From positions 1 to 64,000 of the IMG/VR virus record IMGVR_UViG_3300030329_004647: a DNA stretch of 64,000 bases; one strand, given 5' to 3'. The notes beneath the pieces are model-generated. The model saw only the letters and a list, made by a program, of their open reading frames with translations, did not search any database and was not told where the DNA came from. Shown in pieces: positions 20,387 through 41,861 of this stretch. The first letter of the stretch is position 1; every line of letters starts with the position of its first letter. The position numbers and the translations under genes are program-made.

Positions 20387-23300
20387 ATGGGAAATTATGG
20401 TTATTTAAGATACGCACCTGAACTACTAAGAAGAACATTTAGTTATTTAGAATTTTGTTCTGGATGTGTTTTCGAGTCAGATATAGACTATACAACTTTT
20501 AGTGGTACAGCTATGGGTTTATATTCGAGTGGATTTACACCTTGTGATAAACAAGCTATTGATTACACTACTTTTTATATACTAGACCTAGTCAATGCAT
20601 CGATAACAGGTTCTACTTTTGACAATGAGTATTGGACAGGAAATAGTGGTAACATAATAGCTTCATCCACTACCGTTACTAATGTAGGTATTGGTACGGT
20701 TTCTCCTAATACTAAATTAACGGTTAATGGAGTTGTGTCAAGTACTACAAGTATGGCAGCTCACAATTTTGTATCTACGGGTGCCAGTAACCCATCCGCG
20801 GGATACACATTTAACTCACTATATTTAAGATTCCAGACTGCATATACTAGTACTTACATAGGATTCAGTGTTCCAAGTGGTTTTGACACCAACAGTACGA
20901 AAAACACTGTAGTTGGTCATGGAGCTATGGGAAATGCGACTTTAAACACCGCCACTGATAATACTGGTTTGGGGTATAGAACTTTCTATGATATTACTAG
21001 TGGTGATAGAAATGTAGCTATAGGAAAAACAGCTTCATATAATTTGACAAGTGGTGGTGATAATGTACACGTAGGAGCAAACGCTGGGTTCACAAGTAGT
21101 GTGGGTAATTATAATGTATTTATCGGTTCAGCTGCTGGTTATTATAGTGATGGGGTTGGAACCAATGCTAATACAGCTGTTGGTAGGAATGCTATGCTTA
21201 ACAGTAAGGCTGGTAAACACAATACCACTATGGGACACAACTCCATGTATGGAAATGGGGCATTTCCAGGTGGTACAGGTAATACAGCTATGGGAAGTAA
21301 TAGTTTATCCGCTATACGTGATGGTAAGTATAATACCACAATTGGTTTTGATGCGGGAGACTCGATTACTACGGGAAGTGGTAACACTACTTTAGGTGCT
21401 GGGGCAGGTGATAATATAGTAAATGGTTCTCATAATATTGCTATTGGGAGTGGAACTACTATTTTAGACGGTAGTGAAAGTTGGAGACTAAATATAGGTA
21501 ACATAATTTATGGTAGAGATTTATCTAGTATAAATAGTATAAATGCTGTAGGTATAGGAACACAAGACCCTACAAATAGACTACATGTTGTTGGACATGA
21601 AGAAGAAGACAATCCACTACGACTAGAAACACTCAGTACAGGAAGAGGTAATATAGTTGTAGCTGACGCACAAGGAGTTCTATATAAATCTCAAACCAGT
21701 AGTGGTCATACAGCAGGATTCTGGACTGCAGCTACTGGTGTAATATCGAATAGTGGGTTAACTGGTAACAGTGTAGCGGTAGGTACCAACTCACCTAATT
21801 CTTTATTTGAAGTAAAAGACTACATTACGTTTTATACTGGGTCCTCAGAAGCAAACACGTTCATAGGTTATCATAGTGGAATGAACTACAATGACGATAT
21901 GGAAAAAAATGTAGGGATAGGACACCAAGTCATGGCCTTAGCTGCAAAAACAACAGGTATAAATGCACCTCAGGAAAATACAGCTGTTGGATACCACTCT
22001 TTAAAACACATTACACAGGGAAAACTGAATACCGCTATAGGTACAGACTCATTACAAGAGTTAACTACAGGTCAATATAATGTAGGTATAGGTGCAGGAG
22101 CAGGAAGTGGAGTAACCACTCAAGAATACAATATTGCAATAGGTAGTCTGACTTTACGAAACATGGATGGTACAGCAGCAGGAAGACCTGCTCGTCACAA
22201 TATAGCGATTGGACATAATAGTCAAACCTACAACCCTTTAGGTGTTTTTAACACATGTGTTGGTGGTTTTACTTTAGGTAACACATTTGGTAATGCAGGT
22301 GGTAGTGGTAACACTGTAATGGGATATGGTGCTCTAAAAACCCAAGGTGGTAATTATAATGTTGCTATCGGTTTAGAAGTAGGTAGGGCTGTAACTGTGG
22401 GGAGTGGGAATACTCTACTGGGTTATAAAGTAGCGGACAACCTTACAACAGGAAACCATAATATTATAATAGGATACGATATAGACGCGGTTGAGATTGA
22501 TACAGACAACTCATTAAATATAGGAAAAGCAATCTATGGAACAGGAATAGGTTCGTATGGTGCTAAGATAGGGATAAATACCACTACACCTAACATCGTA
22601 GGACTTCAAGTAGCTGGTGATATTAGTGGTAGTACGATTAGTGCCAATACTAGTGTGTACGCTCAAGAAACAATGACAGCTCAAACTATTGCTTCAGTTA
22701 CCACACTATCGGCTATGGGTGACACTCACACACATGGGGACATCTATGTGGACGAAGATAAAAAAATCTATTTCGACTCAACGGACACTTATATATACGC
22801 AAACACTAATACCTTCGAAAATTTATTAATAGGAGCGGATAATAATATAATACTAGAACCAGATAATGACTTAACAATTAAAGTGGGAGGCACACAATAC
22901 GCTAGGTTTTTTGGTGCAGAGAAAAAAGTTAGAATAGGTACCACATCTAGTACATCACCAATAGCAGAATTAGAAGTAGTGGGTACGGTAAGTGCCGACA
23001 CTGCTATAATAAATGATAAAGTGGGTATTGCTACGGGAACTCCTATGACCGCTTTACACGTCGTTAATGATTATGGAAACGGTATCGGTACACCAGATTG
23101 GGGGTTGGACGAGGGTCAAGGTGGTGGAGAAGTTTTAAAATATGGTAGATTTAATAGTGCAATAACGGCAGAAGGACTAATTGTTATGTTAGTTAATAGT
23201 GGTGGTACTTCCGCGTGGTATAAAGCAGATGCTAGAAACCCTGCTGATACTAGAATTGCTCACCTAGTAGGTGTCGCGTTAGATACTTACGATAGTGGTG

Positions 23301-23572
23301 ACGTTAATAAAACAGCTACAGTTTTACTTAGAGGTTTTGTTAGAATTGATAGTACTTTATGGAATGGAACAACAGCTAACAGTAGTAGAGGTTCACAAGT
23401 TTATGTTTCTCCAGACGCTAATGGTGAATGGACTAATGATGTGTCTGATTTTGATACAACTAACGATGTAATGCGTGGAATGGGTAATTTAATTGTAAGA
23501 GACCCTAGTTCACCTAATGATTATTTTATTTGGTTTAATCCAGACCAAAACTATATTAAAATTCAAGCTTAA
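20387..23572 (+). CDS. putative tail fibre / receptor-binding protein with NTAxG beta-helix-type repeats
   Basis: many NxAxG/NTxxG repeats, VGIGTxxP motifs; C-terminal domain paralogous to 35344. Confidence 0.7.
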   Translation: MGNYGYLRYAPELLRRTFSYLEFCSGCVFESDIDYTTFSGTAMGLYSSGFTPCDKQAIDYTTFYILDLVNASITGSTFDNEYWTGNSGNIIASSTTVTNVGIGTVSPNTKLTVNGVVSSTTSMAAHNFVSTGASNPSAGYTFNSLYLRFQTAYTSTYIGFSVPSGFDTNSTKNTVVGHGAMGNATLNTATDNTGLGYRTFYDITSGDRNVAIGKTASYNLTSGGDNVHVGANAGFTSSVGNYNVFIGSAAGYYSDGVGTNANTAVGRNAMLNSKAGKHNTTMGHNSMYGNGAFPGGTGNTAMGSNSLSAIRDGKYNTTIGFDAGDSITTGSGNTTLGAGAGDNIVNGSHNIAIGSGTTILDGSESWRLNIGNIIYGRDLSSINSINAVGIGTQDPTNRLHVVGHEEEDNPLRLETLSTGRGNIVVADAQGVLYKSQTSSGHTAGFWTAATGVISNSGLTGNSVAVGTNSPNSLFEVKDYITFYTGSSEANTFIGYHSGMNYNDDMEKNVGIGHQVMALAAKTTGINAPQENTAVGYHSLKHITQGKLNTAIGTDSLQELTTGQYNVGIGAGAGSGVTTQEYNIAIGSLTLRNMDGTAAGRPARHNIAIGHNSQTYNPLGVFNTCVGGFTLGNTFGNAGGSGNTVMGYGALKTQGGNYNVAIGLEVGRAVTVGSGNTLLGYKVADNLTTGNHNIIIGYDIDAVEIDTDNSLNIGKAIYGTGIGSYGAKIGINTTTPNIVGLQVAGDISGSTISANTSVYAQETMTAQTIASVTTLSAMGDTHTHGDIYVDEDKKIYFDSTDTYIYANTNTFENLLIGADNNIILEPDNDLTIKVGGTQYARFFGAEKKVRIGTTSSTSPIAELEVVGTVSADTAIINDKVGIATGTPMTALHVVNDYGNGIGTPDWGLDEGQGGGEVLKYGRFNSAITAEGLIVMLVNSGGTSAWYKADARNPADTRIAHLVGVALDTYDSGDVNKTATVLLRGFVRIDSTLWNGTTANSSRGSQVYVSPDANGEWTNDVSDFDTTNDVMRGMGNLIVRDPSSPNDYFIWFNPDQNYIKIQA

Positions 23573-23574
23573 TT

Positions 23575-23946
23575 ATGCCAGACATTGAAGATTTAAACTC
23601 AAAAGATTTTTGTGATAATGTTGTTTCAATAAATGGAATGCAACTAGCTAATATCGTTTCTATTAATACGTTATTACAAGATTGTGTAACTTGTGCTGAA
23701 ATCATTCTAGGACCATCTCATTTTAGTTGTGGTAGAGCGTGTGTAGCAGAATGTACTGCACACTACACAGATGGTGATACCGCAGCTAACCTAGTAACGG
23801 GGGACCATATATATGAAAATGAGGAATGTACTTGTCCAGGTAACACAAGTAATATATATTATTCCAATAAATGTGGGGGAAGAAGTGGTGTTTGTTATAC
23901 CATTAATCCGGCGGATTGTGAAATTATTAGTGTAACCTCTTGTTAA
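23575..23946 (+). CDS. Cys-rich fibre partner protein
   Basis: paralogue of 37388 (NGxxLANI, CxTC, TDG, YYSNxCGxRSG). Confidence 0.7.
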   Translation: MPDIEDLNSKDFCDNVVSINGMQLANIVSINTLLQDCVTCAEIILGPSHFSCGRACVAECTAHYTDGDTAANLVTGDHIYENEECTCPGNTSNIYYSNKCGGRSGVCYTINPADCEIISVTSC

Positions 23947-24493: not shown

Positions 24494-24838
24494 TTATTTC
24501 CAAAAAATTTGAATAGAAACTAAACACACGGATAAGATTAATGAAATCATAGTTTTAGTGTTGATTCCTTCACCTTTTAAAACCCAAGTTAATATAGAAA
24601 AAATAATAATTCCACAGGCAAACGCTATAAATCTTTGAGGCCATAAAAGACCACCAAAACCAGCTACACCTTGTCTAGTCGCCTCTAAAAATATCCAACT
24701 AATAGGTAATCCAAAAAGTATTAAAATCCATTCATATTTTTTAAAAGAGTCCCAAACAAATTGTCCATTTAATTGTAACCAGACCATTGTTTGAGCAACT
24801 AAAAAAATCAATATAGCAAAAAGTATGTTCTTATTCAT
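24494..24838 (-). CDS. 4-TM small membrane protein (DMT/SMR-like topology)
   Basis: four hydrophobic segments in 114 aa. Confidence 0.65.
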   Translation of the reverse strand: MNKNILFAILIFLVAQTMVWLQLNGQFVWDSFKKYEWILILFGLPISWIFLEATRQGVAGFGGLLWPQRFIAFACGIIIFSILTWVLKGEGINTKTMISLILSVCLVSIQIFWK

Positions 24839-25598: not shown

Positions 25599-25979
25599 AT
25601 GAAAACAAAAACTGCTGGAATACTTGTAATATGTAAAGAAAACTCAAAACTTTTTTTAGTGAAAAGAGCTCCACATCATTTTTATCATGCCAATGAATGG
25701 TCCATACCATCAGGACATTTAGATGATGGTGAAAAATACAAAGAAGCTGCGATAAGAGAACTTAAAGAAGAGACACAAATAGAAAATGTTGAAGACATAT
25801 CTTTTTTAGGTGCATTAGAAAATGAAGAAAGAAGGTTTGAAATTTTTAAAGGATACGTTCCTAATGAAATCAATCCAGTATTAGACCATGAACACACCGA
25901 TTACGGTTGGTACTCTATATATAATATTCCTTCACCCATGGGACAAAGTTTAAAAAAAGTAATACAAAGAGCTTTGTAA
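25599..25979 (+). CDS. NUDIX hydrolase
   Basis: Nudix box GHLDDGEKYKEAAIRELKEETQI. Confidence 0.92.
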   Translation: MKTKTAGILVICKENSKLFLVKRAPHHFYHANEWSIPSGHLDDGEKYKEAAIRELKEETQIENVEDISFLGALENEERRFEIFKGYVPNEINPVLDHEHTDYGWYSIYNIPSPMGQSLKKVIQRAL

Positions 25980-26022
25980 AAACATAACCACAAAGATAAA
26001 AGTCCGTAAACTTCATTGATGA

Positions 26023-26030
26023 TATTTATC
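26023..26030 (+). promoter_or_regulatory. TATTTATC motif (putative late promoter) heading the envelope operon
   Basis: upstream of ATG 26046. Confidence 0.45.
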
Positions 26031-26045
26031 ATATAAAAGACAGTT

Positions 26046-29000
26046 ATGCGAAATTTTCTATTAATTATATTATGTTTTATATCGTTTGGAGTTGTAGCAC
26101 AGAACGATTCGTGGTTAAACCTACAAATCCAATTTGATAACTATCCTGAAGAATTAGACTGGAAATTATTTCAATTAGACACTTTAGCACCGAACAATAT
26201 TCTTGTCGCAGAGGGCGGACCTTACTACTCAACACCAAACCAACATTTACTTAATGTTTTTATACCTAACTTACATTCTAATGAAACTTACATATTAGAA
26301 GTCCATGACTCATTTGGGGACGGGTTAAGTTGGCCTAATAATGGGTATGTTTATTTGTCTAATATTTGTACGGACACCATATCATATGTGGAGGGAGACT
26401 TTGGTCCTTTTTTTACAGACACATTAACTGTTTCACCATGTAATTCCCCACCATTAGGTTGTCCAGATACATTAGCACTTAACTACGATTCTCTTGCGCA
26501 ATACACAGACATGAGTGTATGTACTTATCCTCCTTGTACTTCAGGTTTAGACACTCTATATGTTGAACCTATATGTGATAATGGGGTTTCAAAATTATAC
26601 TGGCAGTGGTCAGACCAAACAGATACAAATCCTAATTGTGGGATTATCGGTTATTATAGAGGAACAGACCTAAATAACCTCCCTTTTTATCCTTGGCCAA
26701 GTAACTGGCCCCAAGGAGGATTAACAACAACTATTAACCAAACATCACAAGGACAAATGCATTATTTTTATGCGATGTTAGGTGATTCTACTTTAACTGA
26801 CACTCTATCCATAATGCCTATACAATGCATATTAGGATGTACCGACCCTACAGCGATGAATTATAATCCATGGGCAAATGAAGATGACGGTAACTGTCAA
26901 AGCGCACAAGGAAGTTGTAATTACGGAGAAACATGTGTGAGAGTAATAGTAACACCAGATTCTTATGGAGAAGAAACTTATTGGTCACTAACCGATACTA
27001 TTACAGGAACCGTATTAGGTTCTGTGAATCCTGGTTTCTACTCAACACCAGGAGTTCCAGTAACCACTAATGTATGTGCACCTGAAAATTCAGTATTAGA
27101 ATTTACATTAAACGACCAATATGGAGACGGTATGTGTGGAACTTGTTGGGGTGGAATAGATGGTTCGGTGTTAGTAGAAGCTTGTGGTGATACTATAGCA
27201 CACATTGGACCTCCTACACCTATGGATTTTGGAAGTGATACAACGTTTGTTGCGGTTCCAGCACCAGTGTGTACAACAACAGGACCTACAGTAGGTTGTA
27301 TGGACCCAGGTTATGTCGAATACCTCCCAACAGCAACACAACAAAATCCAGGAGATTGTGTAACACCCGTTCAGTTGGGTTGTGTTGACCCAATGGCTTT
27401 TAATTATGACTCCACAGCCAATCAACAACTTATAACACCTAGCTGTACTTATACGTTAAGGTTATTAGATGGTGCTGGTGATGGATGGTTCGGTTCTTGG
27501 ATAGGAATCACACAAGGAGATTCTATTATTGGTGATTTTACTATGACACAAGGAGACACTCTAGACATTCCAATAGTATTAGACGCAATAAAACCAGCAA
27601 AAATATATTTCTTTACACTAGGAAATTCAGTATCAACAGCTAGTCAATGTGGTGTTCAACTAATAAACCCAATGGGACAAGTTACATTTTACGCTGGTTC
27701 TAATCCATGGACAGACCCTATTATTCCATTTCCTTTTATATACACCACAATTCAAGATTGTGGAAACAGTTGTGTACCTACAATTCCAGGATGTATGGAT
27801 TCTACCGCATACAATTATAATCCAGGAGCAAATGTACCAGATACAGTGTTTCCGTGTTTTTACAATCCAGGGTGTATAAGTCCTGCTTATTTAGAATACC
27901 ATACTTATTTAGATTCTGTTGGTGTTGCTCCAGATTTTCTGGACCCATTTTCTTGTCAGAACCTTGCAATTTTTGGTTGTATGGACTCAACTCAATTTAA
28001 TTACGACCAATATGCTACTGTTAATTGGACTTCCGCGACCGATTCATCAGACCCGTGTGTCCCTATGATATATGGTTGTACAGACGCCACAGCTTTAAAT
28101 TATGACCCATTGGCTAATACAGAAAATTATACGTGTATACTACCAATATATGGGTGTACGGATTCAACAGCTTTTAATTTTAACCCATTAGCGAATACAA
28201 ATAATGGAACTTGTATTGCTGTAATAGAAGGGTGTACTGACCCTACAGCTATGAATTATAATCCTAACGCTAATACAGATGATTTTAGTTGTATAGCTTA
28301 CATTTACGGTTGTACCGACTCCACGATGTGGAATTATAATCCATTAGCAAACACAGATAACGGAACCTGTGAACCTTTTGTTTATGGTTGTACGGATGTT
28401 ATAGCAGCTAACTTTGACCCATTAGCAAACACAAATAACAATACATGTTATTATAATCCAGGTTGTACCGACCCACTTTATGTAGAATTTTATAATCAAG
28501 GATTTACCGCTGACTTTGACGATGGTAGTTGTTTGACCCTAGTTGTATATGGTTGTACCGATAACACTATGTTTAATTATGACCCAACCGCAAATGTAGA
28601 TAATGGTAGTTGTGAACCTTTTGTGTATGGGTGTATAGACTCTACTATGTTTAACTATGACCCATTAGCTAACACGGATAATGGTACGTGTGTACCTTTT
28701 ATTTACGGGTGTATGGACGCCACAATGTTTAATTACGACCCATTAGCCAATACAAATCAAGTGAGTGAAACAGATATCTCCAACCCATGTATACCAATTA
28801 TATATGGATGTACCGACTCAACAGCATTTAATTATGACCCTTATGCAAATACAGATAACGGAACTTGTGAAGCAGTGGTATACGGATGTACAGATGAATA
28901 CGATTTTCCAGCATACCTAGATTCAACTTATATAAATTATTTACCAGGATTTTCAACGGTTACCACTTACAATGTTGATGTCACAGCAAATACAGACGAC

Positions 29001-29417
29001 GGGAGTTGTCTATATTATGATGAAAATAGTGTAACAGGACCAGGTACACCTTATTGGTTAAATGATTCATGTTACGCTTGGGTAGTATATGATGTTGACC
29101 CATACTGTATGACAAATCAATGGGATGCTTTTTGTCAATCACAATATGATTATTGTGAATTTGGAACACCAATTGGATTAAATGAAATGACACGTGACCA
29201 AGTTTTGATTTTTCCTAATCCAACTAATGACTTAGTAACTATTAGGTCTAAAGAATCAGTAGATGTAAATATTTATGACTTCTTAGGTAATTTAATATTT
29301 GAATTAAAATCAATACAAGAAGAAAAGGTGGACCTGCGACCTTATTCTTCCGGTATTTATAATATACAACTTACTTACAAAGGTATAATTATAAATCATA
29401 AAGTAGTTAAACAATGA
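26046..29417 (+). CDS. T9SS-secreted Cys-repeat protein
   Basis: Sec signal peptide; about 18 GCxDxxAxNYxPxA..C repeats; C-terminal IFPNPTN..IYDFLGN..SGIYNI..KVVKQ sorting domain. Confidence 0.88.
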   Translation: MRNFLLIILCFISFGVVAQNDSWLNLQIQFDNYPEELDWKLFQLDTLAPNNILVAEGGPYYSTPNQHLLNVFIPNLHSNETYILEVHDSFGDGLSWPNNGYVYLSNICTDTISYVEGDFGPFFTDTLTVSPCNSPPLGCPDTLALNYDSLAQYTDMSVCTYPPCTSGLDTLYVEPICDNGVSKLYWQWSDQTDTNPNCGIIGYYRGTDLNNLPFYPWPSNWPQGGLTTTINQTSQGQMHYFYAMLGDSTLTDTLSIMPIQCILGCTDPTAMNYNPWANEDDGNCQSAQGSCNYGETCVRVIVTPDSYGEETYWSLTDTITGTVLGSVNPGFYSTPGVPVTTNVCAPENSVLEFTLNDQYGDGMCGTCWGGIDGSVLVEACGDTIAHIGPPTPMDFGSDTTFVAVPAPVCTTTGPTVGCMDPGYVEYLPTATQQNPGDCVTPVQLGCVDPMAFNYDSTANQQLITPSCTYTLRLLDGAGDGWFGSWIGITQGDSIIGDFTMTQGDTLDIPIVLDAIKPAKIYFFTLGNSVSTASQCGVQLINPMGQVTFYAGSNPWTDPIIPFPFIYTTIQDCGNSCVPTIPGCMDSTAYNYNPGANVPDTVFPCFYNPGCISPAYLEYHTYLDSVGVAPDFLDPFSCQNLAIFGCMDSTQFNYDQYATVNWTSATDSSDPCVPMIYGCTDATALNYDPLANTENYTCILPIYGCTDSTAFNFNPLANTNNGTCIAVIEGCTDPTAMNYNPNANTDDFSCIAYIYGCTDSTMWNYNPLANTDNGTCEPFVYGCTDVIAANFDPLANTNNNTCYYNPGCTDPLYVEFYNQGFTADFDDGSCLTLVVYGCTDNTMFNYDPTANVDNGSCEPFVYGCIDSTMFNYDPLANTDNGTCVPFIYGCMDATMFNYDPLANTNQVSETDISNPCIPIIYGCTDSTAFNYDPYANTDNGTCEAVVYGCTDEYDFPAYLDSTYINYLPGFSTVTTYNVDVTANTDDGSCLYYDENSVTGPGTPYWLNDSCYAWVVYDVDPYCMTNQWDAFCQSQYDYCEFGTPIGLNEMTRDQVLIFPNPTNDLVTIRSKESVDVNIYDFLGNLIFELKSIQEEKVDLRPYSSGIYNIQLTYKGIIINHKVVKQ

Positions 29418-30016
29418 GACACATAAACACATTTGTAAAAGCTAACCTCACAGTAGTTTACTTAGGAATATTATTAATATTTTTTGCACTGATGTTAACT
29501 GCTTGTGAAAAAGACCCAATAGAACCCTATAATCCTCCTGAGGCTATTAATCCAGATGAAATAAAAGGCAATTGGGAAATAACTAACTTTTATTTATTAG
29601 AGGAAGGGTTTAGAATTGATTTATCTGCGTGGGTAGTATATGTAAATGATTCTGTAGCAGATATAGGTACTATAATCTTTAATGACGAAGGAAACGCAAA
29701 TTTTGATTTGATATATGGTACCAGAGCAGAAGGTTATGACTCCCAAATGAGATGGGGAGATAACTTTAATTCCGCTTTACAAGACAGTTCTACTTTAGGT
29801 TGGAACTGGAGAGCTGAAAAACCTTTGTGTAACACCACTGAGTATAATTATGATTATAACCCAGCACAATATTTTTTAGGAATGAACTTAGAAGATTGGA
29901 CTACAACTTATAAAACAGAAAATAAATGGATAATTGAAAATACAAGACATTATAATGATGAATTAGAATTGACGGGAGAACACTTCCAGTACCGTCGTTT
30001 AACTTTAGAAAGATAA
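29414..30016 (+). CDS. lipoprotein, lipocalin-like
   Basis: lipobox LTA|C EKD; IKGNWEIT motif. Confidence 0.75.
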   Translation: MRHINTFVKANLTVVYLGILLIFFALMLTACEKDPIEPYNPPEAINPDEIKGNWEITNFYLLEEGFRIDLSAWVVYVNDSVADIGTIIFNDEGNANFDLIYGTRAEGYDSQMRWGDNFNSALQDSSTLGWNWRAEKPLCNTTEYNYDYNPAQYFLGMNLEDWTTTYKTENKWIIENTRHYNDELELTGEHFQYRRLTLER

Positions 30017-30020
30017 ATTT

Positions 30021-30407
30021 ATGACAACTACAAAAACACAAGGATTTTTACAAAAAATTGACCCACAAATGTGGTTAACTTTAATAGGCTTTGTATTCAC
30101 CCTAGGACTTATTTATGGAGAGTTTCAACAAATGAAAAATCAAATACAAATATTTGAAGAAAAACAAAAACTTTTTGATGAAGATTTTGAGAATGAAACC
30201 AAAATGGTACTTGAAAAATTTGAAACATTAGAAGAAAAACTACAACTTGAAATTGAAACGGTAGAACAAAGATTAGATAAAAAGATTAAAACAATAAATA
30301 CTCTAGAAGATAAAGTATTTGATATTACAAAAGAAATAGATGTTGAGTTTAAGAAAATAGAAATGCAAATAAAAAATTTAGGAGGCCATGATATAACTAA
30401 AGAATAA
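30021..30407 (+). CDS. membrane-anchored coiled-coil protein
   Basis: TM WLTLIGFVFTLGLIY then heptads. Confidence 0.7.
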   Translation: MTTTKTQGFLQKIDPQMWLTLIGFVFTLGLIYGEFQQMKNQIQIFEEKQKLFDEDFENETKMVLEKFETLEEKLQLEIETVEQRLDKKIKTINTLEDKVFDITKEIDVEFKKIEMQIKNLGGHDITKE

Positions 30408-30408
30408 T

Positions 30409-31521
30409 ATGAAAAATATACTTTTAATATTAACTCTATTACCACTTCTTTCTTTTGGACAAACAGACTCACTTAATTTACAACTTAAACAGGATTGGTT
30501 TAAAACCAACGTATTTGATGGGCTAGAGATTTATTTAGCGGGTAGTTATGGTAGACCTAATGATTTTTCTGACCAAACACTATTAGATGATTATGGATTT
30601 ACTATAGGTTTTAAGAAAAAAGCTAGTGAACTGTGTATAACTTGTCCAAAAAATGAATTTGGTAGAAAAGATGAAGAATTAAAAGCAGATGAAGATAAAG
30701 AATCATATGCTTTTAATAAACAAGGTTTAGAGTATAGAATTACCTGGAGTTATTTTAGAGACGATAATAAACCCTTTAAAGAAGACAGACAGTCTGTTAG
30801 ATACACTAAATTATTTAAAAAATGGGGTGTATGGGCTGAAGTAGACCATAGAAATACTATTTTTGATGATATTTCAGAATCAGGGTCCAATCAAGAATAT
30901 GTAAAAGGAGGTATAAGATTATTATTTAGAGCAACAGATTGGTTAAATATTACTGGTGGGGTAAATGCTAGAACAAACCCATTCGTATCATATACTAATG
31001 AGTTTATTAATTGGTATGAGGGAGCTTCTTGGGATACTGAGTCGTCTGCACAAAACGTATTTTATGATTTTAATGGTGATGGTAGTTGGGAAGATACAGA
31101 ATTAGTAGGTACTTACACAGAAATATTAGACCCTGTGTTAAATGAACCTTATGTTACAAATGCATATAATGCAAAAAAAGAAATTTGGGTTGCATCATCA
31201 TCACCTGTAATAGGTTTAGATATTCTTACCGAATCAAGCATCTACTTTTTTAATTTATTTGTTAACATTTATCCTTACCCTTATGATGTCATCACACCTG
31301 AAGTTGAATATGTTTACTCTGGTAATGACGTGGAATTAAAAGCATTTGGTATGGAAGCTGATTGGGCTCCTACTGAATCAATTACAGAATTTGATGCTGG
31401 GTTAGTTATAGGTTTAAAACTTGGTAAAAACTTTTCCGCTGAATTAAACGGAGAAATATCTAATTACTATGGAGTCTATAACTACAGGACTCAAATTGGA
31501 TTAAAATACAAATTAAAGTAA
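30409..31521 (+). CDS. putative outer-membrane beta-barrel protein
   Basis: signal peptide MKNILLILTLLPLLSFG; alternating beta-strand pattern; C-terminal YRTQIGLKYKLK. Confidence 0.65.
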   Translation: MKNILLILTLLPLLSFGQTDSLNLQLKQDWFKTNVFDGLEIYLAGSYGRPNDFSDQTLLDDYGFTIGFKKKASELCITCPKNEFGRKDEELKADEDKESYAFNKQGLEYRITWSYFRDDNKPFKEDRQSVRYTKLFKKWGVWAEVDHRNTIFDDISESGSNQEYVKGGIRLLFRATDWLNITGGVNARTNPFVSYTNEFINWYEGASWDTESSAQNVFYDFNGDGSWEDTELVGTYTEILDPVLNEPYVTNAYNAKKEIWVASSSPVIGLDILTESSIYFFNLFVNIYPYPYDVITPEVEYVYSGNDVELKAFGMEADWAPTESITEFDAGLVIGLKLGKNFSAELNGEISNYYGVYNYRTQIGLKYKLK

Positions 31522-31522
31522 A

Positions 31523-33928
31523 ATGCAAATCAACAAGTATCCCACCGCGACCATCTTTGGTGTATATATTCTATTTCTATTATTTCTACTATTCAACTCA
31601 ACACAATTAGTAGCTCAAACTATAACCATACAAGACCAACAAACCTTAGAACCCATCCCCTTTGCGAATATTTCGTCCTACCAGTTGTTAATAACAGAAA
31701 CAGCTAATGGGTTTGTTACAGATTCAGTTAGGGTTGGTACAACAACAGACATCAATGGTCATGCTGATATTTCAGACTGGTCCGATGATATGTTACTACA
31801 TATATCATTTCTTGGTTATGAAAAAAGAAAGATAACTAAAGGAGAGATATTAAAAAAGAATAATGTTATTTTCTTAAGAGAGACCGCACAGTTTTTAGAA
31901 CAAGTGGTAATATCTGCTAGTAAGTTTAGAGAAAAAAGAGAAGATGTGGCTTATTCTATAGAATCTTTAGATAGAAAAACCATAGAAAACGCAAATGTAA
32001 CACAAACTCCAGACCTTCTTACAAAAACTAATGGAGTAACAATTCAAAAGTCACAATTAGGTGGAGGTTCCCCAATCATAAGAGGATTTGAAGCTAATAG
32101 AGTTCTATTAGTAGTTGATGGTGTTAGAATGAATAACGCGATTTATCGTTCTGGTCACTTACAAAATTCTTTAACAATTGACCCTAATGCAGTAGAAATA
32201 GTGGAAGTGGTATTTGGTCCTTCATCCACGATTTATGGGAGTGATGCGTTAGGAGGGGTAATACATTTTTATACACGTAAACCACAATTTAGTAAGAATG
32301 ATAAAATATTTACCCAAACAAAGGTTGTGAGTCGTATGTCTCTTGCTGATGAAGGAATGTCTACTCATATAGATTATAACATAGGAGGTAAAAATGTTGC
32401 TAATTTTACCAGTTTAACATATACTAGTTTTGGGGATTTGAGGATGGGTCAAAACAGAAATCATGGGTATGATGATTGGGGGTTGGCAAACTATTACATT
32501 AACGAGAACGACGAAATGGTGGAAAATGAGAATTCTCATATACAAGTAGGTACAGGTTATGAACAATATGATTTACTTAATAATCTTACATGGAAAGCAA
32601 CTCCAGAAATAATTTTAAGATGGAACACCCAACTATCCACTACTACAAATATACCTAGATATGATAACCTACAAGATTATAATGATGGTGAGTTAAAATG
32701 GAGTGAATGGCACTACGGACCTCAGACTAGATTTTTTACTTCACTACAAGGTAATGTATATAAACAAACTAAATTTTATGATAATTTTAGAGTAACATCC
32801 GCATATCAATTCATTAAAGAGGATAGAATAACAAGAAAGTATCAATCAGAGGATTATAATAACACATATGTAGATGTACACGTATCCAGTATTAATTTTG
32901 ACCTTTCAAAGAAAAAACTTTTATACGGGTTTGAGTTTGTTAATAACCAAGTAATATCTACCTCAACGGCAGGAACTCAACCAAGATATCCTTCAGGTGG
33001 AAGTGACTTAACATCAATCGCAGCTTATACAACATATAAACATCACTTTTCAGAAAAATTCTTAATTGCGGGTGGGTTAAGATATTCTTCCATATTTGCA
33101 AACATGTCTTTTAACAATGATGACCCTGTATTTGTTACTGATGAAATAAATGCAACAAACGGCGCACTTACGGGAAATATAAATAGTGTTTGGAAACCAG
33201 GGAATGGGTGGAAATTCGATGTTGTTGGAAGTACAGGTTTTAGAAGTCCAAACATTGATGACTACGGTAAAGTCTTTGTTAAAAGAGGTGACATGGTTAT
33301 CCCTAATCCAGACCTTACACCAGAATATGCTTATAATACAGAAGGTACTTTGACTAAAACTTGGTCCAACATATCCTTAGCTGGAACAATATATAATACA
33401 TGGTTAAGAGATGCTATCACCAAACAAGATTTAGGGTATAGTCAAATACATGAAGACGAAGAAGTAAATGTGCAAACCCTGATGAATACTGAGGAAGCCT
33501 ATGTTAGAGGTATTTCTTTAGTTGGGAAATACGAACCAGTAGAAGAACTTTATTTTGAATCCTCATTTAACCTACAAAAAGGATATGATATATCAAATGA
33601 TGAACCTCTTGGTCATATTCCACCCGCATATGGTAAATTTTTAACTAGATTTAAACTTAAAAAATTTGAAGGAAGGGTTTGGTACGATTACGCTTTACCT
33701 AAATTATTAGAGAATTCTAATGGGGCGACGGACAATATTGATTTAGCGACTGATGAAGGTTGGCCTTTTTGGTATACACTTAATTTAAGTATGACCTATA
33801 ATATAAACAAAGGTCTTACAATGCAAATAGGGTTGGAAAATTTAATGGACCTACACTATAGAACATTCGCTTCTGGTCTTTCAGCACCAGGAAGAAATGT
33901 GATAATAAAAGCACAATATAAATTTTAA
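31523..33928 (+). CDS. TonB-dependent receptor (Bacteroidota type, N-terminal CarboxypepD_reg-like domain)
   Basis: EQVVISAS, GGGSPIIRGFEANRVLLVVDGVRMNN, FGPSSTIYGSDALGGVI, FRSPNIDD, C-terminal PGRNVIIKAQYKF. Confidence 0.95.
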   Translation: MQINKYPTATIFGVYILFLLFLLFNSTQLVAQTITIQDQQTLEPIPFANISSYQLLITETANGFVTDSVRVGTTTDINGHADISDWSDDMLLHISFLGYEKRKITKGEILKKNNVIFLRETAQFLEQVVISASKFREKREDVAYSIESLDRKTIENANVTQTPDLLTKTNGVTIQKSQLGGGSPIIRGFEANRVLLVVDGVRMNNAIYRSGHLQNSLTIDPNAVEIVEVVFGPSSTIYGSDALGGVIHFYTRKPQFSKNDKIFTQTKVVSRMSLADEGMSTHIDYNIGGKNVANFTSLTYTSFGDLRMGQNRNHGYDDWGLANYYINENDEMVENENSHIQVGTGYEQYDLLNNLTWKATPEIILRWNTQLSTTTNIPRYDNLQDYNDGELKWSEWHYGPQTRFFTSLQGNVYKQTKFYDNFRVTSAYQFIKEDRITRKYQSEDYNNTYVDVHVSSINFDLSKKKLLYGFEFVNNQVISTSTAGTQPRYPSGGSDLTSIAAYTTYKHHFSEKFLIAGGLRYSSIFANMSFNNDDPVFVTDEINATNGALTGNINSVWKPGNGWKFDVVGSTGFRSPNIDDYGKVFVKRGDMVIPNPDLTPEYAYNTEGTLTKTWSNISLAGTIYNTWLRDAITKQDLGYSQIHEDEEVNVQTLMNTEEAYVRGISLVGKYEPVEELYFESSFNLQKGYDISNDEPLGHIPPAYGKFLTRFKLKKFEGRVWYDYALPKLLENSNGATDNIDLATDEGWPFWYTLNLSMTYNINKGLTMQIGLENLMDLHYRTFASGLSAPGRNVIIKAQYKF

Positions 33929-34324: not shown

Positions 34325-34513
34325 ATGACTATAGCTAGAATTATTATCACTATGGGGGTTCTAGCAATATTTGCATGGTTAGTTTACCTTATATTTTTTG
34401 AGGAGGTTACGGGTACCACTCGTGACCTTCTTTTTATTTTGGTAGGTGGATTCCTCAGTTCATTCCAAAATATAATAGACTATTGGTTTAAAAAAGAAAA
34501 AAAACATGTCTAA
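34325..34513 (+). CDS. 2-TM holin-like protein
   Basis: two TM helices, RDLLFILVGG...IIDYWF, basic C-terminus. Confidence 0.5.
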   Translation: MTIARIIITMGVLAIFAWLVYLIFFEEVTGTTRDLLFILVGGFLSSFQNIIDYWFKKEKKHV

Positions 34514-35343: not shown

Positions 35344-37386
35344 ATGGCAGATTTATCCAATCTTAAAATATCAAGTACCTTTCCAAGAGTCTTACAAAGA
35401 GACCCTGACACTGGTCAGTTACAAAACTTGGTGGGAAATAAACCAACTAATCTTATTATTCAAGATACTACATTAAGATATGTAGATGGTAATCAACAAA
35501 ACAATTATATATTAACATCTGACGCTGATGGTAATGCAAGATGGGCAGTTAATTCTGGTGGTGGAGGAAGTACCGATATCTATTGGTCAGCAAATACCAC
35601 AAACACCACACCTAGTATAACACCATCTGGGACTAGTGTAGCTACACCTATTTTAGTTAAGAATGACATAAGTGGAGCTACTGATTTATATTTAGGTAAT
35701 TCTACCGCTAATGTTGTAGATACCTATACAGCTTCTACTATTTCTGCTTATGATAAACTAACAATTAAGGGAAGACGTGTTGACAATGATTTTATAGTAT
35801 TACAACAGGATGAAGTTAAATTGTTTCTGGATGGAACGGAATCAATAGTGTTTAGAAGTGGCACTCACCCTAGTGGGAGTGCTGACTACATTTTTAATTC
35901 TGCTAGCCAAGATATTGATTTCGCGATTAATGGACCTACAAATACAAACTTCAAAGTCAGTGTTTCGAGAGATGCTATAAGGATGAAAGACCACGTAACA
36001 GTTGGAGGAGCATCTTTTGTTTCTTGGAATAATATGGAAAATTGGGGACTTGCGGTAACAGGAACATCATACTTAGTATCAGGAGGAACCAACGGATTAG
36101 ATAAAAACGCGATAACAACGAGTGGTAATACTCACATACACGGTTCACTTAGTGCCAACACAAATGTTACTGTAGATGGAACTCTATCCGCTAACACCAT
36201 CTCAAGTAAGAATATAAATGAATCAATTCTAACAATCCAATCTGATGAGGTAAAAATAGCAAGTCACGGTGGAAGTCCTGAATATCTAAATATTAAAGAT
36301 GATGTTATTAAATTTTATATTGATAATTCAGAAGCGGTTACCTTTGACAAGTCAAACTCACAATATCTCTTTAACGCTGCTCAACAAGATTACGATTTTG
36401 TAATTGGTGGAAGTACAGGAATTAACACATTCCAGGTAGACGTAAGTGCGAACCTAGCTAGATTTAGAGACCACCTAACAATAGGTACTTCTCTTGGTAT
36501 ATCCAGCCAAATAGGGATAAGGTTTGGATTATCAGTAACTGGAACTTCTTATTTAATTTCAGGTGGTACTCAAGGTGCTGATAAAAACGCAATAACAACA
36601 AGTGGAAATACACATATACATGGTGTGATGAGTGCTAATACCGCTGCATATGCACCTTTCTTAACGACAGACTATGTTATAGCAAATTCGTCAAATGGTC
36701 TGTGGTTAAAAGAAGACGGTGGTAGAGGTATAGAAATTCAAGATGGAGGAAATATTGCAATTGGTGGTACAGGACAAAACGCCAATGAACAATTAACAGT
36801 TAGTGCGGGAATATCTGGAGTTACCGTTTATTCCAAAACTGATATGTACGCGGGAGTTACAGGTAGAATGAGTGGTGGTACAGTAGTAGCTGCTACGAGT
36901 TTATCAGCGATGAGTGAGACAACCATAGACGGTAATCTTAATTTAAATGGTTATGTAAAATATAAACAACCCGCATTTTTGGATAATAATGCTGGTTCAG
37001 GAGAAATAGCATATTTTGGTATTGCACAAGGAGGTTCAACCACTAAAGGAAAATTATACTATCTCCAAACAAATGGTGCTTGGGATGAAGTTCAGGCAAA
37101 TGCTTCTAGTAATGATGGTAATAGTCAATTATTAGGTATTGCTCTAGGTTCCACACCAGCTTCTAATGGAATGTTGTTAAGAGGGTTTTTTGATATGAAT
37201 AGTCATTTTACTGGTACTTTTGATGAGGGAATACCAGTATATATTGATGATAATAACTCGGGTTACATAACAGTCACCCAACCAGCTGGAAACAATGAAT
37301 TTGTTAGAGTAGTAGGATATTGTACCAATACCGCAAACGTTATTTATTTTAATCCAGATGGAACTTACATAACAGTGAACGCGTAA
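35344..37386 (+). CDS. putative tail fibre / structural protein with internal duplication
   Basis: two copies of ...GLxVTGTSYLxSGGTxGxDKNAITTSGNTHIHG; C-terminal domain paralogous to 20387. Confidence 0.7.
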   Translation: MADLSNLKISSTFPRVLQRDPDTGQLQNLVGNKPTNLIIQDTTLRYVDGNQQNNYILTSDADGNARWAVNSGGGGSTDIYWSANTTNTTPSITPSGTSVATPILVKNDISGATDLYLGNSTANVVDTYTASTISAYDKLTIKGRRVDNDFIVLQQDEVKLFLDGTESIVFRSGTHPSGSADYIFNSASQDIDFAINGPTNTNFKVSVSRDAIRMKDHVTVGGASFVSWNNMENWGLAVTGTSYLVSGGTNGLDKNAITTSGNTHIHGSLSANTNVTVDGTLSANTISSKNINESILTIQSDEVKIASHGGSPEYLNIKDDVIKFYIDNSEAVTFDKSNSQYLFNAAQQDYDFVIGGSTGINTFQVDVSANLARFRDHLTIGTSLGISSQIGIRFGLSVTGTSYLISGGTQGADKNAITTSGNTHIHGVMSANTAAYAPFLTTDYVIANSSNGLWLKEDGGRGIEIQDGGNIAIGGTGQNANEQLTVSAGISGVTVYSKTDMYAGVTGRMSGGTVVAATSLSAMSETTIDGNLNLNGYVKYKQPAFLDNNAGSGEIAYFGIAQGGSTTKGKLYYLQTNGAWDEVQANASSNDGNSQLLGIALGSTPASNGMLLRGFFDMNSHFTGTFDEGIPVYIDDNNSGYITVTQPAGNNEFVRVVGYCTNTANVIYFNPDGTYITVNA

Positions 37387-37387
37387 T

Positions 37388-37747
37388 ATGGCAGAACAAG
37401 GAGGAATAGACGGTAGAGATATGTGTTCTTCAGTTAAAGATATGAACGGTGTGTTACTAGCTAATATTAAAGGAATTGGAGGTAGAGATAGGACAGCATG
37501 TACAACTTGTGAGTCAGTTAGTTTAGCAGGTAATAGAATTGCATCGACAGCGTGTGCTCTTGCTTGTGATACCTTCTTCACGGATGGAACCCCCTCTAAT
37601 CTACAATTAGGGGATAAGATATTTAGTAATGCGGAATGTACTGAATTAGCAGCAAGAAATTACTACTCTAATAGGTGTGGAGCAAGAAGTGGTAATGTTT
37701 ATTTAATTGATTCTAATGGAGCAATAACTAATATTGCTTCATGTTAA
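37388..37747 (+). CDS. Cys-rich fibre partner protein
   Basis: paralogue of 23575. Confidence 0.7.
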   Translation: MAEQGGIDGRDMCSSVKDMNGVLLANIKGIGGRDRTACTTCESVSLAGNRIASTACALACDTFFTDGTPSNLQLGDKIFSNAECTELAARNYYSNRCGARSGNVYLIDSNGAITNIASC

Positions 37748-41848: not shown

Positions 41849-41856
41849 TATTTATT
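41849..41856 (+). promoter_or_regulatory. TATTTATT motif (putative late promoter)
   Basis: 5 nt before ATG 41862. Confidence 0.45.
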
Positions 41857-41861
41857 TGTAT

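What the first reader, a model, noticed from the sequence alone, without database searches (positions are those of the whole stretch)
26046..29417. Phage-encoded T9SS cargo with about 18 Cys-rich GCxD repeats
Seen: Sec signal peptide, about 18 repeats of GC(T/M)DxxAxNYxPxAxxDxGxC, interspersed beta domains, and a canonical T9SS type A C-terminal domain. Established: such CTDs route proteins through the Bacteroidota T9SS to the surface. Inference: the phage hijacks the host T9SS to display an adhesin- or shield-like protein on the infected cell (aggregation, grazing defence or superinfection block).
Basis: partly seen in the sequence, partly recalled or inferred. Interest (0 to 1): 0.75.

Follow-up and report, generated by a model that had tools for sequence, protein, structure and literature searches.

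The report
Jumbo-phage surface fibril exported by T9SS
A marine jumbo phage that probably infects Flavobacteriales carries an intact, conserved gene for a long, cysteine-rich stalk protein with every sequence signal for export through its host's type IX secretion system; phage-encoded T9SS cargo has been reported once before, but here the gene heads a phage operon of five exported envelope proteins that ends in a heme-type outer-membrane receptor.

Summary
Window 26046-29417 (+) is one intact ORF of 1123 aa. It has a Sec-type leader, four beta-sandwich domains, 18 GCxD-type repeats (0.35 expected by chance), a small Cys-rich domain and a type A T9SS C-terminal domain. That domain scores above both curated cut-offs and superposes on substrate CTDs solved inside the Flavobacterium translocon.

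The 232-kb record is a real tailed phage, with terminase, portal, major head and baseplate genes. The locus is not a chimera: at least 24 independent contigs carry it, contigs from other runs bridge both junctions, and related phages are syntenic. dN/dS is about 0.08.

The gene heads an apparent operon of five exported proteins: cargo, lipoprotein, membrane-anchored coiled coil, an orphan secreted protein and a heme/hemoglobin-type TonB-dependent receptor. Three related phages keep this order.

The most likely reading is a fibril displayed through T9SS on the infected cell. I favour a capture or adhesion arm for the phage's own uptake cassette. Receptor masking and virocell adhesion remain open.

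Phage-encoded T9SS cargo was published in 2020, and many viral homologues sit in databases, so this is a new variant of a known kind. No function has been tested.

The parts
26046..29417 (+). Cargo gene, 1123 aa (P0001): T9SS type A substrate with a fibrillar architecture
   Evidence: Intact ORF. PF18962 and TIGR04183 score above their cut-offs. It is the only TIGR04183 match in the 232-kb genome. dN/dS is about 0.08 against an 80%-identical relative.
26046..26102 (+). Sec-type signal peptide, aa 1-19, with a VAQ|N site
   Evidence: Read from the sequence. M1 and Q19 are nearly invariant in 41 homologues. dN/dS is 0.22.
26103..27779 (+). Head: four beta-sandwich domains (D1 aa 20-135, D2 160-262 FnIII-like, D3 285-415, D4 468-578), separated by single or double GCxD repeats
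   Evidence: AF2 pLDDT is 70-87. D2 matches FnIII domains at Z about 7. D1 and D3 are paralogous. D1 has the highest dN, 0.21. No Pfam family matches.
27789..29009 (+). Stalk: 14 tandem GCxD repeats (aa 582-988), two Cys each, with no Lys or Arg
   Evidence: A four-repeat AF2 model has pLDDT 96. Foldseek finds no PDB fold match. A single copy of the motif is present in MPEG-1, PDB 6u23.
29016..29195 (+). Small Cys-rich domain with conserved Trp and Asp (aa 991-1050), preceding the CTD
   Evidence: W1004, C1009, C1021, W1026, D1027, C1030 and C1037 are invariant. The domain is present in all phage homologues at 39-77% identity.
29208..29414 (+). T9SS type A C-terminal sorting domain (aa 1055-1123)
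   Evidence: VIA-align gives Z 8.8 to 8glk_D (NucA CTD in the translocon), 8.4 to 8gl6_D (RemA CTD) and 8.5 to the RgpB CTD 5ag9. P1057, N1058, P1059, G1081, G1103, Y1105 and K1122 are invariant.
29414..30016 (+). 200-aa predicted lipoprotein (lipobox L-T-A-C); its start overlaps the cargo stop codon
   Evidence: Sequence. It is 63-67% identical and syntenic in L016, L043 and L047. ESM-feature neighbours are Bacteroidota lipocalin-like/DUF5004 lipoproteins, which is a lead only.
30021..30407 (+). 128-aa protein with one N-terminal transmembrane helix and a coiled-coil body; the most conserved gene of the module
   Evidence: Sequence. It is 82-95% identical in relatives. dN/dS is 0.03.
30409..31521 (+). 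370-aa signal-peptide protein, an orphan family with an invariant CxTCP motif
   Evidence: Only 47 relatives were found, all at least 53% identical and without a Pfam family. It is not PorP/SprF. An RNA-library contig covers 30253-30885.
31523..33928 (+). TonB-dependent receptor, 801 aa, with a signal peptide, a CarboxypepD_reg-like N-domain, a plug and a barrel; closest to heme/hemoglobin receptors
   Evidence: Pfam Plug scores 84 bits and the barrel 80.8 bits. TIGR01785 aligns end to end at 209 bits, below its cut-off of 317. The best PDB sequence match is PhuR, 8the. It matches phrog_5687.
34400..34432 (+). Terminator-like hairpin (15 pairs, then a T-run) that probably ends the transcription unit
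   Evidence: No comparable hairpin lies between the cargo gene and the receptor gene.

Best explanation
The gene belongs to a lineage of marine jumbo myophages of about 230-300 kb that most likely infect Flavobacteriales.

Shown by sequence and fold: the product has a Sec leader, 56 Cys in the mature chain, and a canonical type A T9SS C-terminal domain.

Inferred route: in the infected cell the protein crosses the inner membrane through Sec and folds and oxidises in the periplasm. The host SprA/PorV translocon recognises its CTD and passes it across the outer membrane. It then stays on, or is shed from, the cell surface.

Inferred architecture: the four N-terminal beta-sandwich domains form the distal head. 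They sit on a rigid, very acidic stalk of 14 disulfide-stapled repeats, which is the layout of a fibrillar adhesin.

Favoured function (inferred, about 0.35): the fibril is the capture or adhesion arm of a phage-encoded envelope cassette. The other members are a lipoprotein, a membrane-anchored coiled-coil protein, an orphan secreted protein and a heme-type TonB-dependent receptor. Together they would give the virocell an extra route to bind and import a scarce ligand during a long jumbo-phage infection.

My confidence in the export-and-display step alone is about 0.8.
For: - CTD: it scores above both curated cut-offs. Its fold matches CTDs solved inside the F. johnsoniae T9SS. The sorting-motif residues are invariant in 41 homologues.
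- Leader: the signal peptide is conserved.
- Selection: purifying selection acts on all parts, leader and CTD included.
- Phage identity: TerL, portal, major head and baseplate genes are present. The closest cultured major-capsid relative is a Flavobacterium phage, which itself carries one CTD ORF.
- Conservation: each of five related or unrelated viral records carries exactly one CTD gene of this family.
- Operon: starts and stops overlap or abut, all five products carry export signals, and one strong terminator follows the unit. The order is conserved in L016, L043 and L047 at 44-95% identity.
- Receptor type: the TonB-dependent receptor is heme/hemoglobin-like.
- Precedent: in Flavobacterium, HmuY is a T9SS-secreted protein that serves heme uptake (PMC9618737).
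- Swappable heads: relatives carry MAM heads on the same stalk and CTD.
Against: - No experiment exists, and the host is unknown.
- No clean transcript of the cargo gene was found. One metatranscriptome holds 7% of the sampled words of the head region, and another holds a 633-nt contig on the downstream genes. DNA carry-over is not excluded.
- The head matches no known ligand-binding family. There is no HmuY domain.
- Related phages (L042, G003, G004, G198:C32) keep the cargo without the receptor. The cargo's role therefore cannot depend strictly on the receptor.
- A long stalk would hold the head far from a receptor in the membrane.
- The same repeat occurs in leaderless tail-block proteins of this phage and in a cyanophage virion protein.
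Confidence: 0.6

Rival explanations
1. Superinfection exclusion or receptor masking. The phage floods the T9SS and the cell surface with its own fibril, together with the lipoprotein. This hides or displaces the host surface proteins that this or competing phages use as receptors, and it keeps progeny from sticking to debris.
For: The module lies between two paralogous fibre-like gene cassettes. The distal domain D1 is the most variable part. A lipoprotein is co-encoded. From general knowledge: the T5 Llp lipoprotein, encoded next to the receptor-binding gene, blocks the TonB-dependent receptor FhuA; and Flavobacterium phage resistance often maps to gliding/T9SS genes. Bellas et al. raised the same idea.
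Against: Selection is purifying overall, not diversifying. This reading does not explain why the phage brings a complete receptor of its own. There is no evidence about this phage's receptor.
Confidence: 0.2
2. Virocell adhesin. The displayed fibril glues infected cells to particles, algae or other host cells. This would improve transmission or keep the cell in a nutrient-rich patch, independently of the receptor.
For: The layout is that of a fibrillar adhesin: head, tandem stalk and anchor. Relatives have MAM-type heads. The cargo is conserved in relatives that lack the receptor.
Against: The head contains no recognised adhesive domain. Nothing shows that it binds anything.
Confidence: 0.2
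3. Virion-associated protein. The fibril ends up on phage particles as a decoration or fibre rather than on the cell.
For: GCxD repeats occur in a cyanophage 'virion structural protein' and in two tail-block proteins of this phage. The gene's neighbours are fibre-like genes. ESM look-alikes of D3 are small viral proteins.
Against: Those virion proteins have no leader and no CTD. Here both are conserved and under purifying selection. A Sec-exported protein is separated from cytoplasmic virion assembly. P0001 matches no PHROG structural family.
Confidence: 0.06
4. Assembly chimera with host DNA, or a recently captured host gene drifting without function.
For: The product is bacterial in type, and GC rises locally to 0.376 against about 0.32.
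Against: The identical protein, with the same neighbours, is seen in at least 24 contigs from ENA, Tara and JGI. Contigs from other runs bridge 25614-27058 and 27327-30149 with no differences. Two contigs of 273 kb and 290 kb, whose names end in '_c' (which I read, from convention and not from a test, as a circular-assembly flag), and a 298-kb IMG/VR record carry homologues at the same place. dN/dS is 0.08. In 301 Flavobacteriales genomes, the only full-architecture hit sits on a phage-like contig.
Confidence: 0.02

Closest known systems
T9SS CTD cargo genes of 'Cryophage' (Bellas et al. 2020, Nat Commun, PMC7468147)
   Same: Phage genes carry type A T9SS sorting domains and are presumed to use the host secretion system. 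The authors suggested altered surface proteins or superinfection effects.
   Different: Those cargoes are an endoglucanase, a GH39 and a PA14 protein in a glacier-surface phage, and they are hypervariable islands. Here the cargo is a non-enzymatic fibril with a GCxD stalk. It is conserved under purifying selection across a marine jumbo-phage lineage and is joined in an operon to four other exported proteins.
Bacterial type A T9SS substrates (F. johnsoniae RemA and NucA, P. gingivalis RgpB)
   Same: They share a Sec leader plus a C-terminal beta-sandwich CTD. The fold aligns at Z 8.4-8.8 and rmsd about 2 A.
   Different: This one is encoded by a virus. The passenger is unrelated to those proteins.
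Fibrillar adhesins (Monzon et al. 2021, bioRxiv 10.1101/2020.12.07.414375)
   Same: They share a distal head, a stalk of tandem repeats and a cell-surface anchor. Por_Secre_tail is one of the anchors listed in that study's search terms.
   Different: The head has no recognised adhesive domain. The stalk repeat has no Pfam family. Binding is untested.
HmuY/HmuR-type heme uptake in Flavobacterium (PMC9618737)
   Same: A T9SS-secreted protein works alongside a TonB-dependent heme receptor.
   Different: No HmuY domain is present here. The receptor scores below the heme-family cut-off. The link is by gene order only.
Envelope proteins of huge phages (Yuan and Chen 2026, bioRxiv 10.64898/2026.10.24.761521; Mar_Mega_1, PMC9723777)
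   Same: Large phages encode outer-membrane barrels, including TonB-dependent receptors, and substrates of a cell-surface sorting system (sortase B).
   Different: Neither paper mentions T9SS. The sorting route here is the Bacteroidota-specific one.
Synechococcus phage S-CAM3 virion structural protein (YP_009321289)
   Same: It has two GCxD repeats that are 45-51% identical to stalk repeats.
   Different: It has only two repeats, no leader and no CTD, and its host has no T9SS.

Membership tests
T9SS type A cargo (TIGR04183 / PF18962) | The CTD profile scores above the curated cut-off, at the extreme C-terminus | tested here: met
   PF18962 scores 40.7 bits against a cut-off of 27, and TIGR04183 scores 39.4 against 23. 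The match covers aa 1055-1123 of 1123.
T9SS type A cargo (TIGR04183 / PF18962) | The CTD adopts the beta-sandwich fold of solved substrate CTDs | tested here: met
   Z is 8.8 to 8glk_D, 8.4 to 8gl6_D and 8gl8_D, 8.5 to 5ag9, and 8.0 to 8qb1. Foldseek aligns the RgpB CTD 7pq4 with TM 0.64.
T9SS type A cargo (TIGR04183 / PF18962) | An N-terminal Sec signal peptide | tested here: met
   By inspection only: a basic n-region, a hydrophobic core and a VAQ|N site, conserved in homologues. No dedicated predictor was run.
T9SS type A cargo (TIGR04183 / PF18962) | The producing cell has a T9SS, and secretion depends on it | not testable with these tools
   The host is unknown. A marine Flavobacteriales MAG (G001) sampled here has PorZ, PorP/SprF and 53 CTD proteins.
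Phage-encoded T9SS cargo (as in Cryophage) | The CTD gene lies inside a bona fide phage genome, not on host DNA | tested here: met
   Phage hallmark genes are present. The locus is found in independent assemblies and bridging contigs and is syntenic in relatives.
Fibrillar adhesin | A stalk of tandem repeats plus a surface anchor | tested here: met
   There are 14 tandem repeats and a T9SS CTD.
Fibrillar adhesin | A recognised adhesive head domain | tested here: not met
   No Pfam family matches aa 20-580. Only a generic FnIII-like fold is seen for D2. Relatives, but not this protein, have MAM domains.
HmuY-type hemophore | An HmuY_like domain (PF14064) | tested here: not met
   No hit was found in the cargo or in the lipoprotein.
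SusC/SusD polysaccharide utilisation locus | A SusC-type receptor with an adjacent SusD-like lipoprotein | tested here: not met
   The best receptor families are heme, B12 and siderophore types, and no SusC/RagA model appears in the list. The neighbours have no SusD family.
PorP/SprF cognate outer-membrane partner (for the 370-aa protein) | A match to PF11751 | tested here: not met
   There is no match in the whole phage genome. hhalign against two bacterial PorP proteins gives a probability of 0.3%.
TonB-dependent heme/hemoglobin receptor (TIGR01785) | A score above the subfamily cut-off | tested here: not met
   The score is 209 bits against a cut-off of 317, although the alignment covers the profile end to end. 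Plug and barrel domains are well above their Pfam cut-offs. The protein is therefore a TonB-dependent receptor, and its heme-type assignment is by nearest family only.

The most novel reading that the evidence does not exclude
A jumbo-phage lineage carries a self-contained, portable 'surface kit'. The kit comprises a T9SS-displayed antenna, a lipoprotein, a membrane-anchored coiled-coil protein, an orphan secreted protein and its own TonB-dependent receptor. Installed on the virocell, it would acquire a limiting ligand such as heme or iron, or re-key the cell surface. The head of the antenna is swappable between phages (four-domain head, MAM head), and the downstream cassette comes in at least two flavours.
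Probability: 0.25. Interest if true: 0.75.

Novelty: new variant of a known kind. Interest (0 to 1): 0.55.

Why it matters
Flavobacteriales are major degraders of algal carbon in the sea, and their surface proteome is largely laid down by the T9SS. A widespread phage lineage that loads its own fibril into that system, and brings its own outer-membrane receptor, would mean that infected cells present a surface partly designed by the virus. That would affect nutrient uptake, particle attachment and susceptibility to other phages.

The only published case called phage T9SS cargo 'a unique occurrence'. The data here show it is common in marine viral sequence collections and conserved under selection.

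The 26-residue GCxD repeat gives a very confident model, has no Pfam family, and is spread across bacteria, phages, protists and even MPEG-1. It deserves a definition of its own.

Tried and rejected
- PHROGs on the cargo and the small neighbours: no family.
- Foldseek of the full model against the PDB: only generic Ig/FnIII arrays, apart from the CTD.
- Foldseek of the repeat model against the PDB: nothing significant.
- ESM Atlas feature searches on D1, D3 and the lipoprotein: leads only; the neighbours are viral or Bacteroidota clusters without names.
- The 370-aa protein as a PorP/SprF-like anchor for the cargo: rejected.
- Profile of the 370-aa family against the PDB: nothing.
- Co-folding of the 370-aa protein with the cargo C-terminus: the tool returned 'no answer', so it is not evidence either way.
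- Calcium-binding EF-hand reading of the repeat: the PROSITE pattern does not match. Cation binding therefore rests only on D/N richness and on automatic names of AFDB relatives.
- A bacterial counterpart of the operon: in the one Flavobacteriales MAG where a CTD protein and a similar receptor lie close together, PorZ and RecO sit between them. It is not the same module.
- Bacteroidetes -7 promoter motif: not enriched, and none lies upstream of the gene.
- Sigma-70 scan: below the shuffle mean.
- tRNAs in the window: none.
- Literature search for the phage clade: nothing specific.
- Phylogenetic tree of phage versus bacterial homologues: not built, because most metagenomic relatives lack context. 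Architecture and context comparisons were used instead.
Full report
**What is there.** Window 26046-29417 (+) is a single uninterrupted ORF of 1123 codons. The parts run in this order:
- a Sec-type leader, aa 1-19, ending VAQ|N;
- a beta-sandwich domain D1 (20-135) and one GCxD repeat;
- an FnIII-like domain D2 (160-262) and one repeat;
- domain D3 (285-415), paralogous to D1, and two repeats;
- domain D4 (468-578);
- a stalk of 14 tandem repeats (582-988), mostly with a 26-residue period;
- a small Cys-rich domain with conserved Trp and Asp (991-1050);
- a C-terminal domain (1055-1123).

The motif count is 17 GCxD plus one GCIS variant. Shuffles of the same protein give a mean of 0.35 and never more than 5. 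One of the 57 Cys lies in the leader, leaving 56 in the mature chain, an even number.

**The sorting domain.** The C-terminal 69 residues score 40.7 bits on PF18962 (cut-off 27) and 39.4 bits on TIGR04183 (cut-off 23). A six-frame search of the whole genome finds this as the only match.

In an AlphaFold2 model the domain has pLDDT of about 78. It superposes on substrate CTDs solved inside the Flavobacterium johnsoniae translocon: NucA 8glk_D at Z 8.8, RemA 8gl6_D at Z 8.4 and RemZ 8gl8_D at Z 8.4. It also matches the RgpB (5ag9), mirolase and PorZ CTDs.

The residues typical of the sorting motifs (P-N-P near the start, two Gly, a Tyr, a penultimate Lys) are invariant in 41 homologues.

**Is it phage, and is it contiguous?** The window is the first 64 kb of a 232,028-bp IMG/VR record that CheckV rates 72% complete. 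Outside the window the record encodes:
- a large terminase (phrog_2, E 4e-40);
- a portal (phrog_213, E 2e-65);
- a T4-type major head protein (phrog_138, E 8e-67);
- a baseplate wedge protein, DnaB and ribonucleotide reductase.

The nearest cultured major-capsid relative is Flavobacterium phage vB_FspM_immuto, at 40% identity.

Several lines rule out a chimera:
- The exact protein, with the same neighbours, occurs on at least 24 contigs from ENA, Tara and JGI assemblies.
- Nine public runs from three studies hold 97-100% of the sampled words of 25.5-31.4 kb.
- Contigs from two of those runs bridge the upstream junction (25614-27058) and the downstream junction (27327-30149 and 26618-30078) without a single difference.

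The short 'joints' reported inside the stalk have sides of about 20 letters. They come from cross-matching of repeats in other organisms, so they are not evidence of rearrangement.

**Conservation.** IMG/VR holds 13 loci with relatives. Three of them are phages of the same lineage:
- G002: 298 kb, 93% complete, major capsid 72% and terminase 65% identical;
- G003: 231 kb;
- G004: 173 kb, rated complete.

Others (G005, G006) have no detectable capsid relation. Every viral record searched with the CTD model, including phage immuto, has exactly one CTD gene. A 1.9-Mb Flavobacteriales MAG has 53.

Two contigs of 273,531 and 290,309 bp, whose names end in '_c' (which I read, from convention and not from a test, as a circular-assembly flag), carry homologues at the equivalent position.

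Against a relative whose cargo is 80% identical (L047), dN/dS is about 0.08 for the whole gene, 0.22 for the leader and 0.15 for the CTD. dS is saturated, so these are rough values, but purifying selection is clear. The distal domain D1 has the highest dN.

Among 301 Flavobacteriales species genomes, 25 match parts of the head, and usually only D3 plus a repeat. The single genome with the full architecture carries it on a 43-kb contig full of phage-like genes, probably a mis-binned phage.

An exhaustive HMMER search finds 76 cluster representatives at E below 1e-30, and only about seven of them cover the whole head. ESM Atlas and BFVD neighbours are mostly labelled viral, and some are annotated with the sorting domain or with MAM. 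The architecture therefore looks largely phage-borne, while its modules are shared with host surface proteins.

The cargo stop codon overlaps the start of a 200-aa lipoprotein gene (lipobox L-T-A-C). Three more genes follow with gaps of 1-5 bases:
- a 128-aa protein with one N-terminal membrane helix and a coiled coil;
- a 370-aa signal-peptide protein;
- an 801-aa TonB-dependent receptor with its own leader.

The one strong terminator-like hairpin lies at 34400-34432, after the receptor and a few small ORFs.

The same order recurs in three relatives, with identities of 44-80% (cargo), 63-67% (lipoprotein), 82-95% (128-aa protein), 56-86% (370-aa protein) and 61-75% (receptor).

The receptor aligns end to end with the heme/hemoglobin receptor subfamily TIGR01785 at 209 bits, below the cut-off of 317. 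Its best solved sequence relative is PhuR.

The 370-aa protein is an orphan. Only 47 relatives were found, all at least 53% identical, none with a Pfam family, and all share an invariant CxTCP motif.

Other relatives carry a second flavour: the cargo followed by a conserved signal-peptide protein of about 355 aa and no receptor. Some add a secreted thioredoxin-fold protein with a WCGPC site (which could help oxidise a 56-Cys passenger), a beta-carbonic anhydrase or a ferredoxin.

The island sits between two paralogous cassettes, each a fibre-like gene followed by a small Cys-rich gene.

**The stalk repeat.** In the full-length model the stalk is unresolved, with pLDDT of about 23. Four repeats folded with an alignment of 97 repeat quartets give pLDDT 96 and pTM 0.61, with little regular secondary structure.

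Foldseek finds no solved fold match. A profile search does find one copy of the motif in mammalian MPEG-1, PDB 6u23.

AlphaFold DB holds many relatives at 40-50% identity in Bacteroidota surface proteins, marine protists and viruses. Several are automatically named 'EF-hand', but the PROSITE EF-hand pattern does not match here.

The passenger is extremely acidic and almost free of basic residues: 8 Lys or Arg in 1031 residues, none in the stalk, and a net charge of about -110. The phage proteome has 11.4% Lys plus Arg. Bacterial relatives share this bias. I cannot explain it. Protease resistance and cation binding are the obvious candidates.

**How it most likely works.**

*Shown:* all the signals of a Sec- and T9SS-exported protein are present, conserved and under selection, in a genuine phage genome.

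*Inferred from established T9SS biology:* the preprotein crosses the inner membrane, folds and forms disulfides in the periplasm, and is passed through SprA/PorV by its CTD. It is then released or anchored on the surface. Its N-terminal head sits at the far end of a stiff stalk.

*Inferred from gene order:* it acts together with the other four exported proteins. I favour a capture or adhesion arm that serves the phage's own TonB-dependent uptake route. The precedent is the T9SS-secreted HmuY working alongside heme receptors in Flavobacterium (PMC9618737).

This is weakened by three points. The head has no recognisable binding domain. Some relatives have the cargo without the receptor. The stalk is long.

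Receptor masking (superinfection exclusion) and virocell adhesion are serious rivals. A virion role is unlikely because of the conserved leader and CTD.

**Comparison with what is known.** Bellas et al. (2020) described three T9SS-CTD genes (two glycoside hydrolases and a PA14 protein) in a cryoconite phage. They proposed hijacking of the host system and called it a unique occurrence.

A 2026 preprint on huge phages reports phage outer-membrane barrels, including TonB-dependent receptors, and sortase B substrates, but does not mention T9SS. A marine megaphage paper notes a SusC-like receptor.

The present case is the same kind of thing with several differences:
- a fibrillar, non-enzymatic cargo;
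- a repeat without a family definition;
- conservation across a jumbo-phage lineage;
- an operon of five envelope proteins.

I rate it a new variant of a known kind and of moderate interest. Nothing about function has been tested.

Noticed in passing
window 31523-33928: The phage encodes a TonB-dependent receptor closest to heme/hemoglobin receptors. It has a Bacteroidota-style CarboxypepD_reg-like N-domain and is 61-75% identical in three related phages.
   Followed up: partly
window 30409-31521: An orphan 370-aa secreted protein. Only 47 relatives were found in 5.8 billion proteins, all at least 53% identical, with an invariant CxTCP motif and no Pfam or PDB relative. A metatranscriptome contig covers 30253-30885.
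   Followed up: partly
window 20387-23946 and 35344-37747: Two paralogous cassettes flank the envelope island. Each is a fibre or tail-spike-like gene followed by a small Cys-rich gene. The small proteins are 36% identical, and the fibre C-termini are 28% identical.
   Followed up: partly
G000 218135-220756 and 220773-222203 (outside the window; L013/L014): Two leaderless, Cys-rich proteins next to the baseplate genes each carry a GCTD repeat. The same is true of a virion structural protein of cyanophage S-CAM3. The repeat is therefore not confined to exported proteins.
   Followed up: partly
P0001 aa 20-1050 (window 26103-29195): The passenger has 8 Lys or Arg in 1031 residues (0.8%, against 11.4% in the phage proteome) and a net charge of about -110. 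Phage and bacterial relatives share this bias. It is unexplained.
   Followed up: partly
PDB 6u23 residues 332-352: Mammalian MPEG-1 (perforin-2) contains one copy of the repeat motif (GCTD...ANTDDGSC). The repeat also occurs in marine protists and giant-virus-like records in AlphaFold DB.
   Followed up: no
L016 16798-18096; L042 15714-17048; L042 17054-17734; L047 16004-16321: Related phages add other genes to the same island: a secreted thioredoxin-fold protein (WCGPC, with a D3-like domain), a beta-carbonic anhydrase, or a 4Fe-4S ferredoxin.
   Followed up: partly
L048/L049 (G198 contig C32, 43 kb): A contig binned into a Flavobacteriales MAG carries DnaB, ribonucleotide reductase and several homologues of this phage, plus a full-architecture cargo gene. 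It is probably a mis-binned phage contig.
   Followed up: partly
L045 3192-3923 (Flavobacterium phage immuto, MW353176.1 12691-13422): A cultured Flavobacterium phage has one ORF with a T9SS CTD (47 bits). It is annotated only as 'cohesin domain-containing protein'.
   Followed up: partly
window 24494-24838 (-): A 114-aa multi-pass membrane protein on the opposite strand. It is conserved at 51-86% identity next to the cargo gene in several relatives, including G004.
   Followed up: no
window 45839-51202 and 41856-45815: Two very large ORFs of 1787 and 1319 aa. The first has a C-terminal P-loop kinase or ATPase-like region, and the second matches no PHROG.
   Followed up: no
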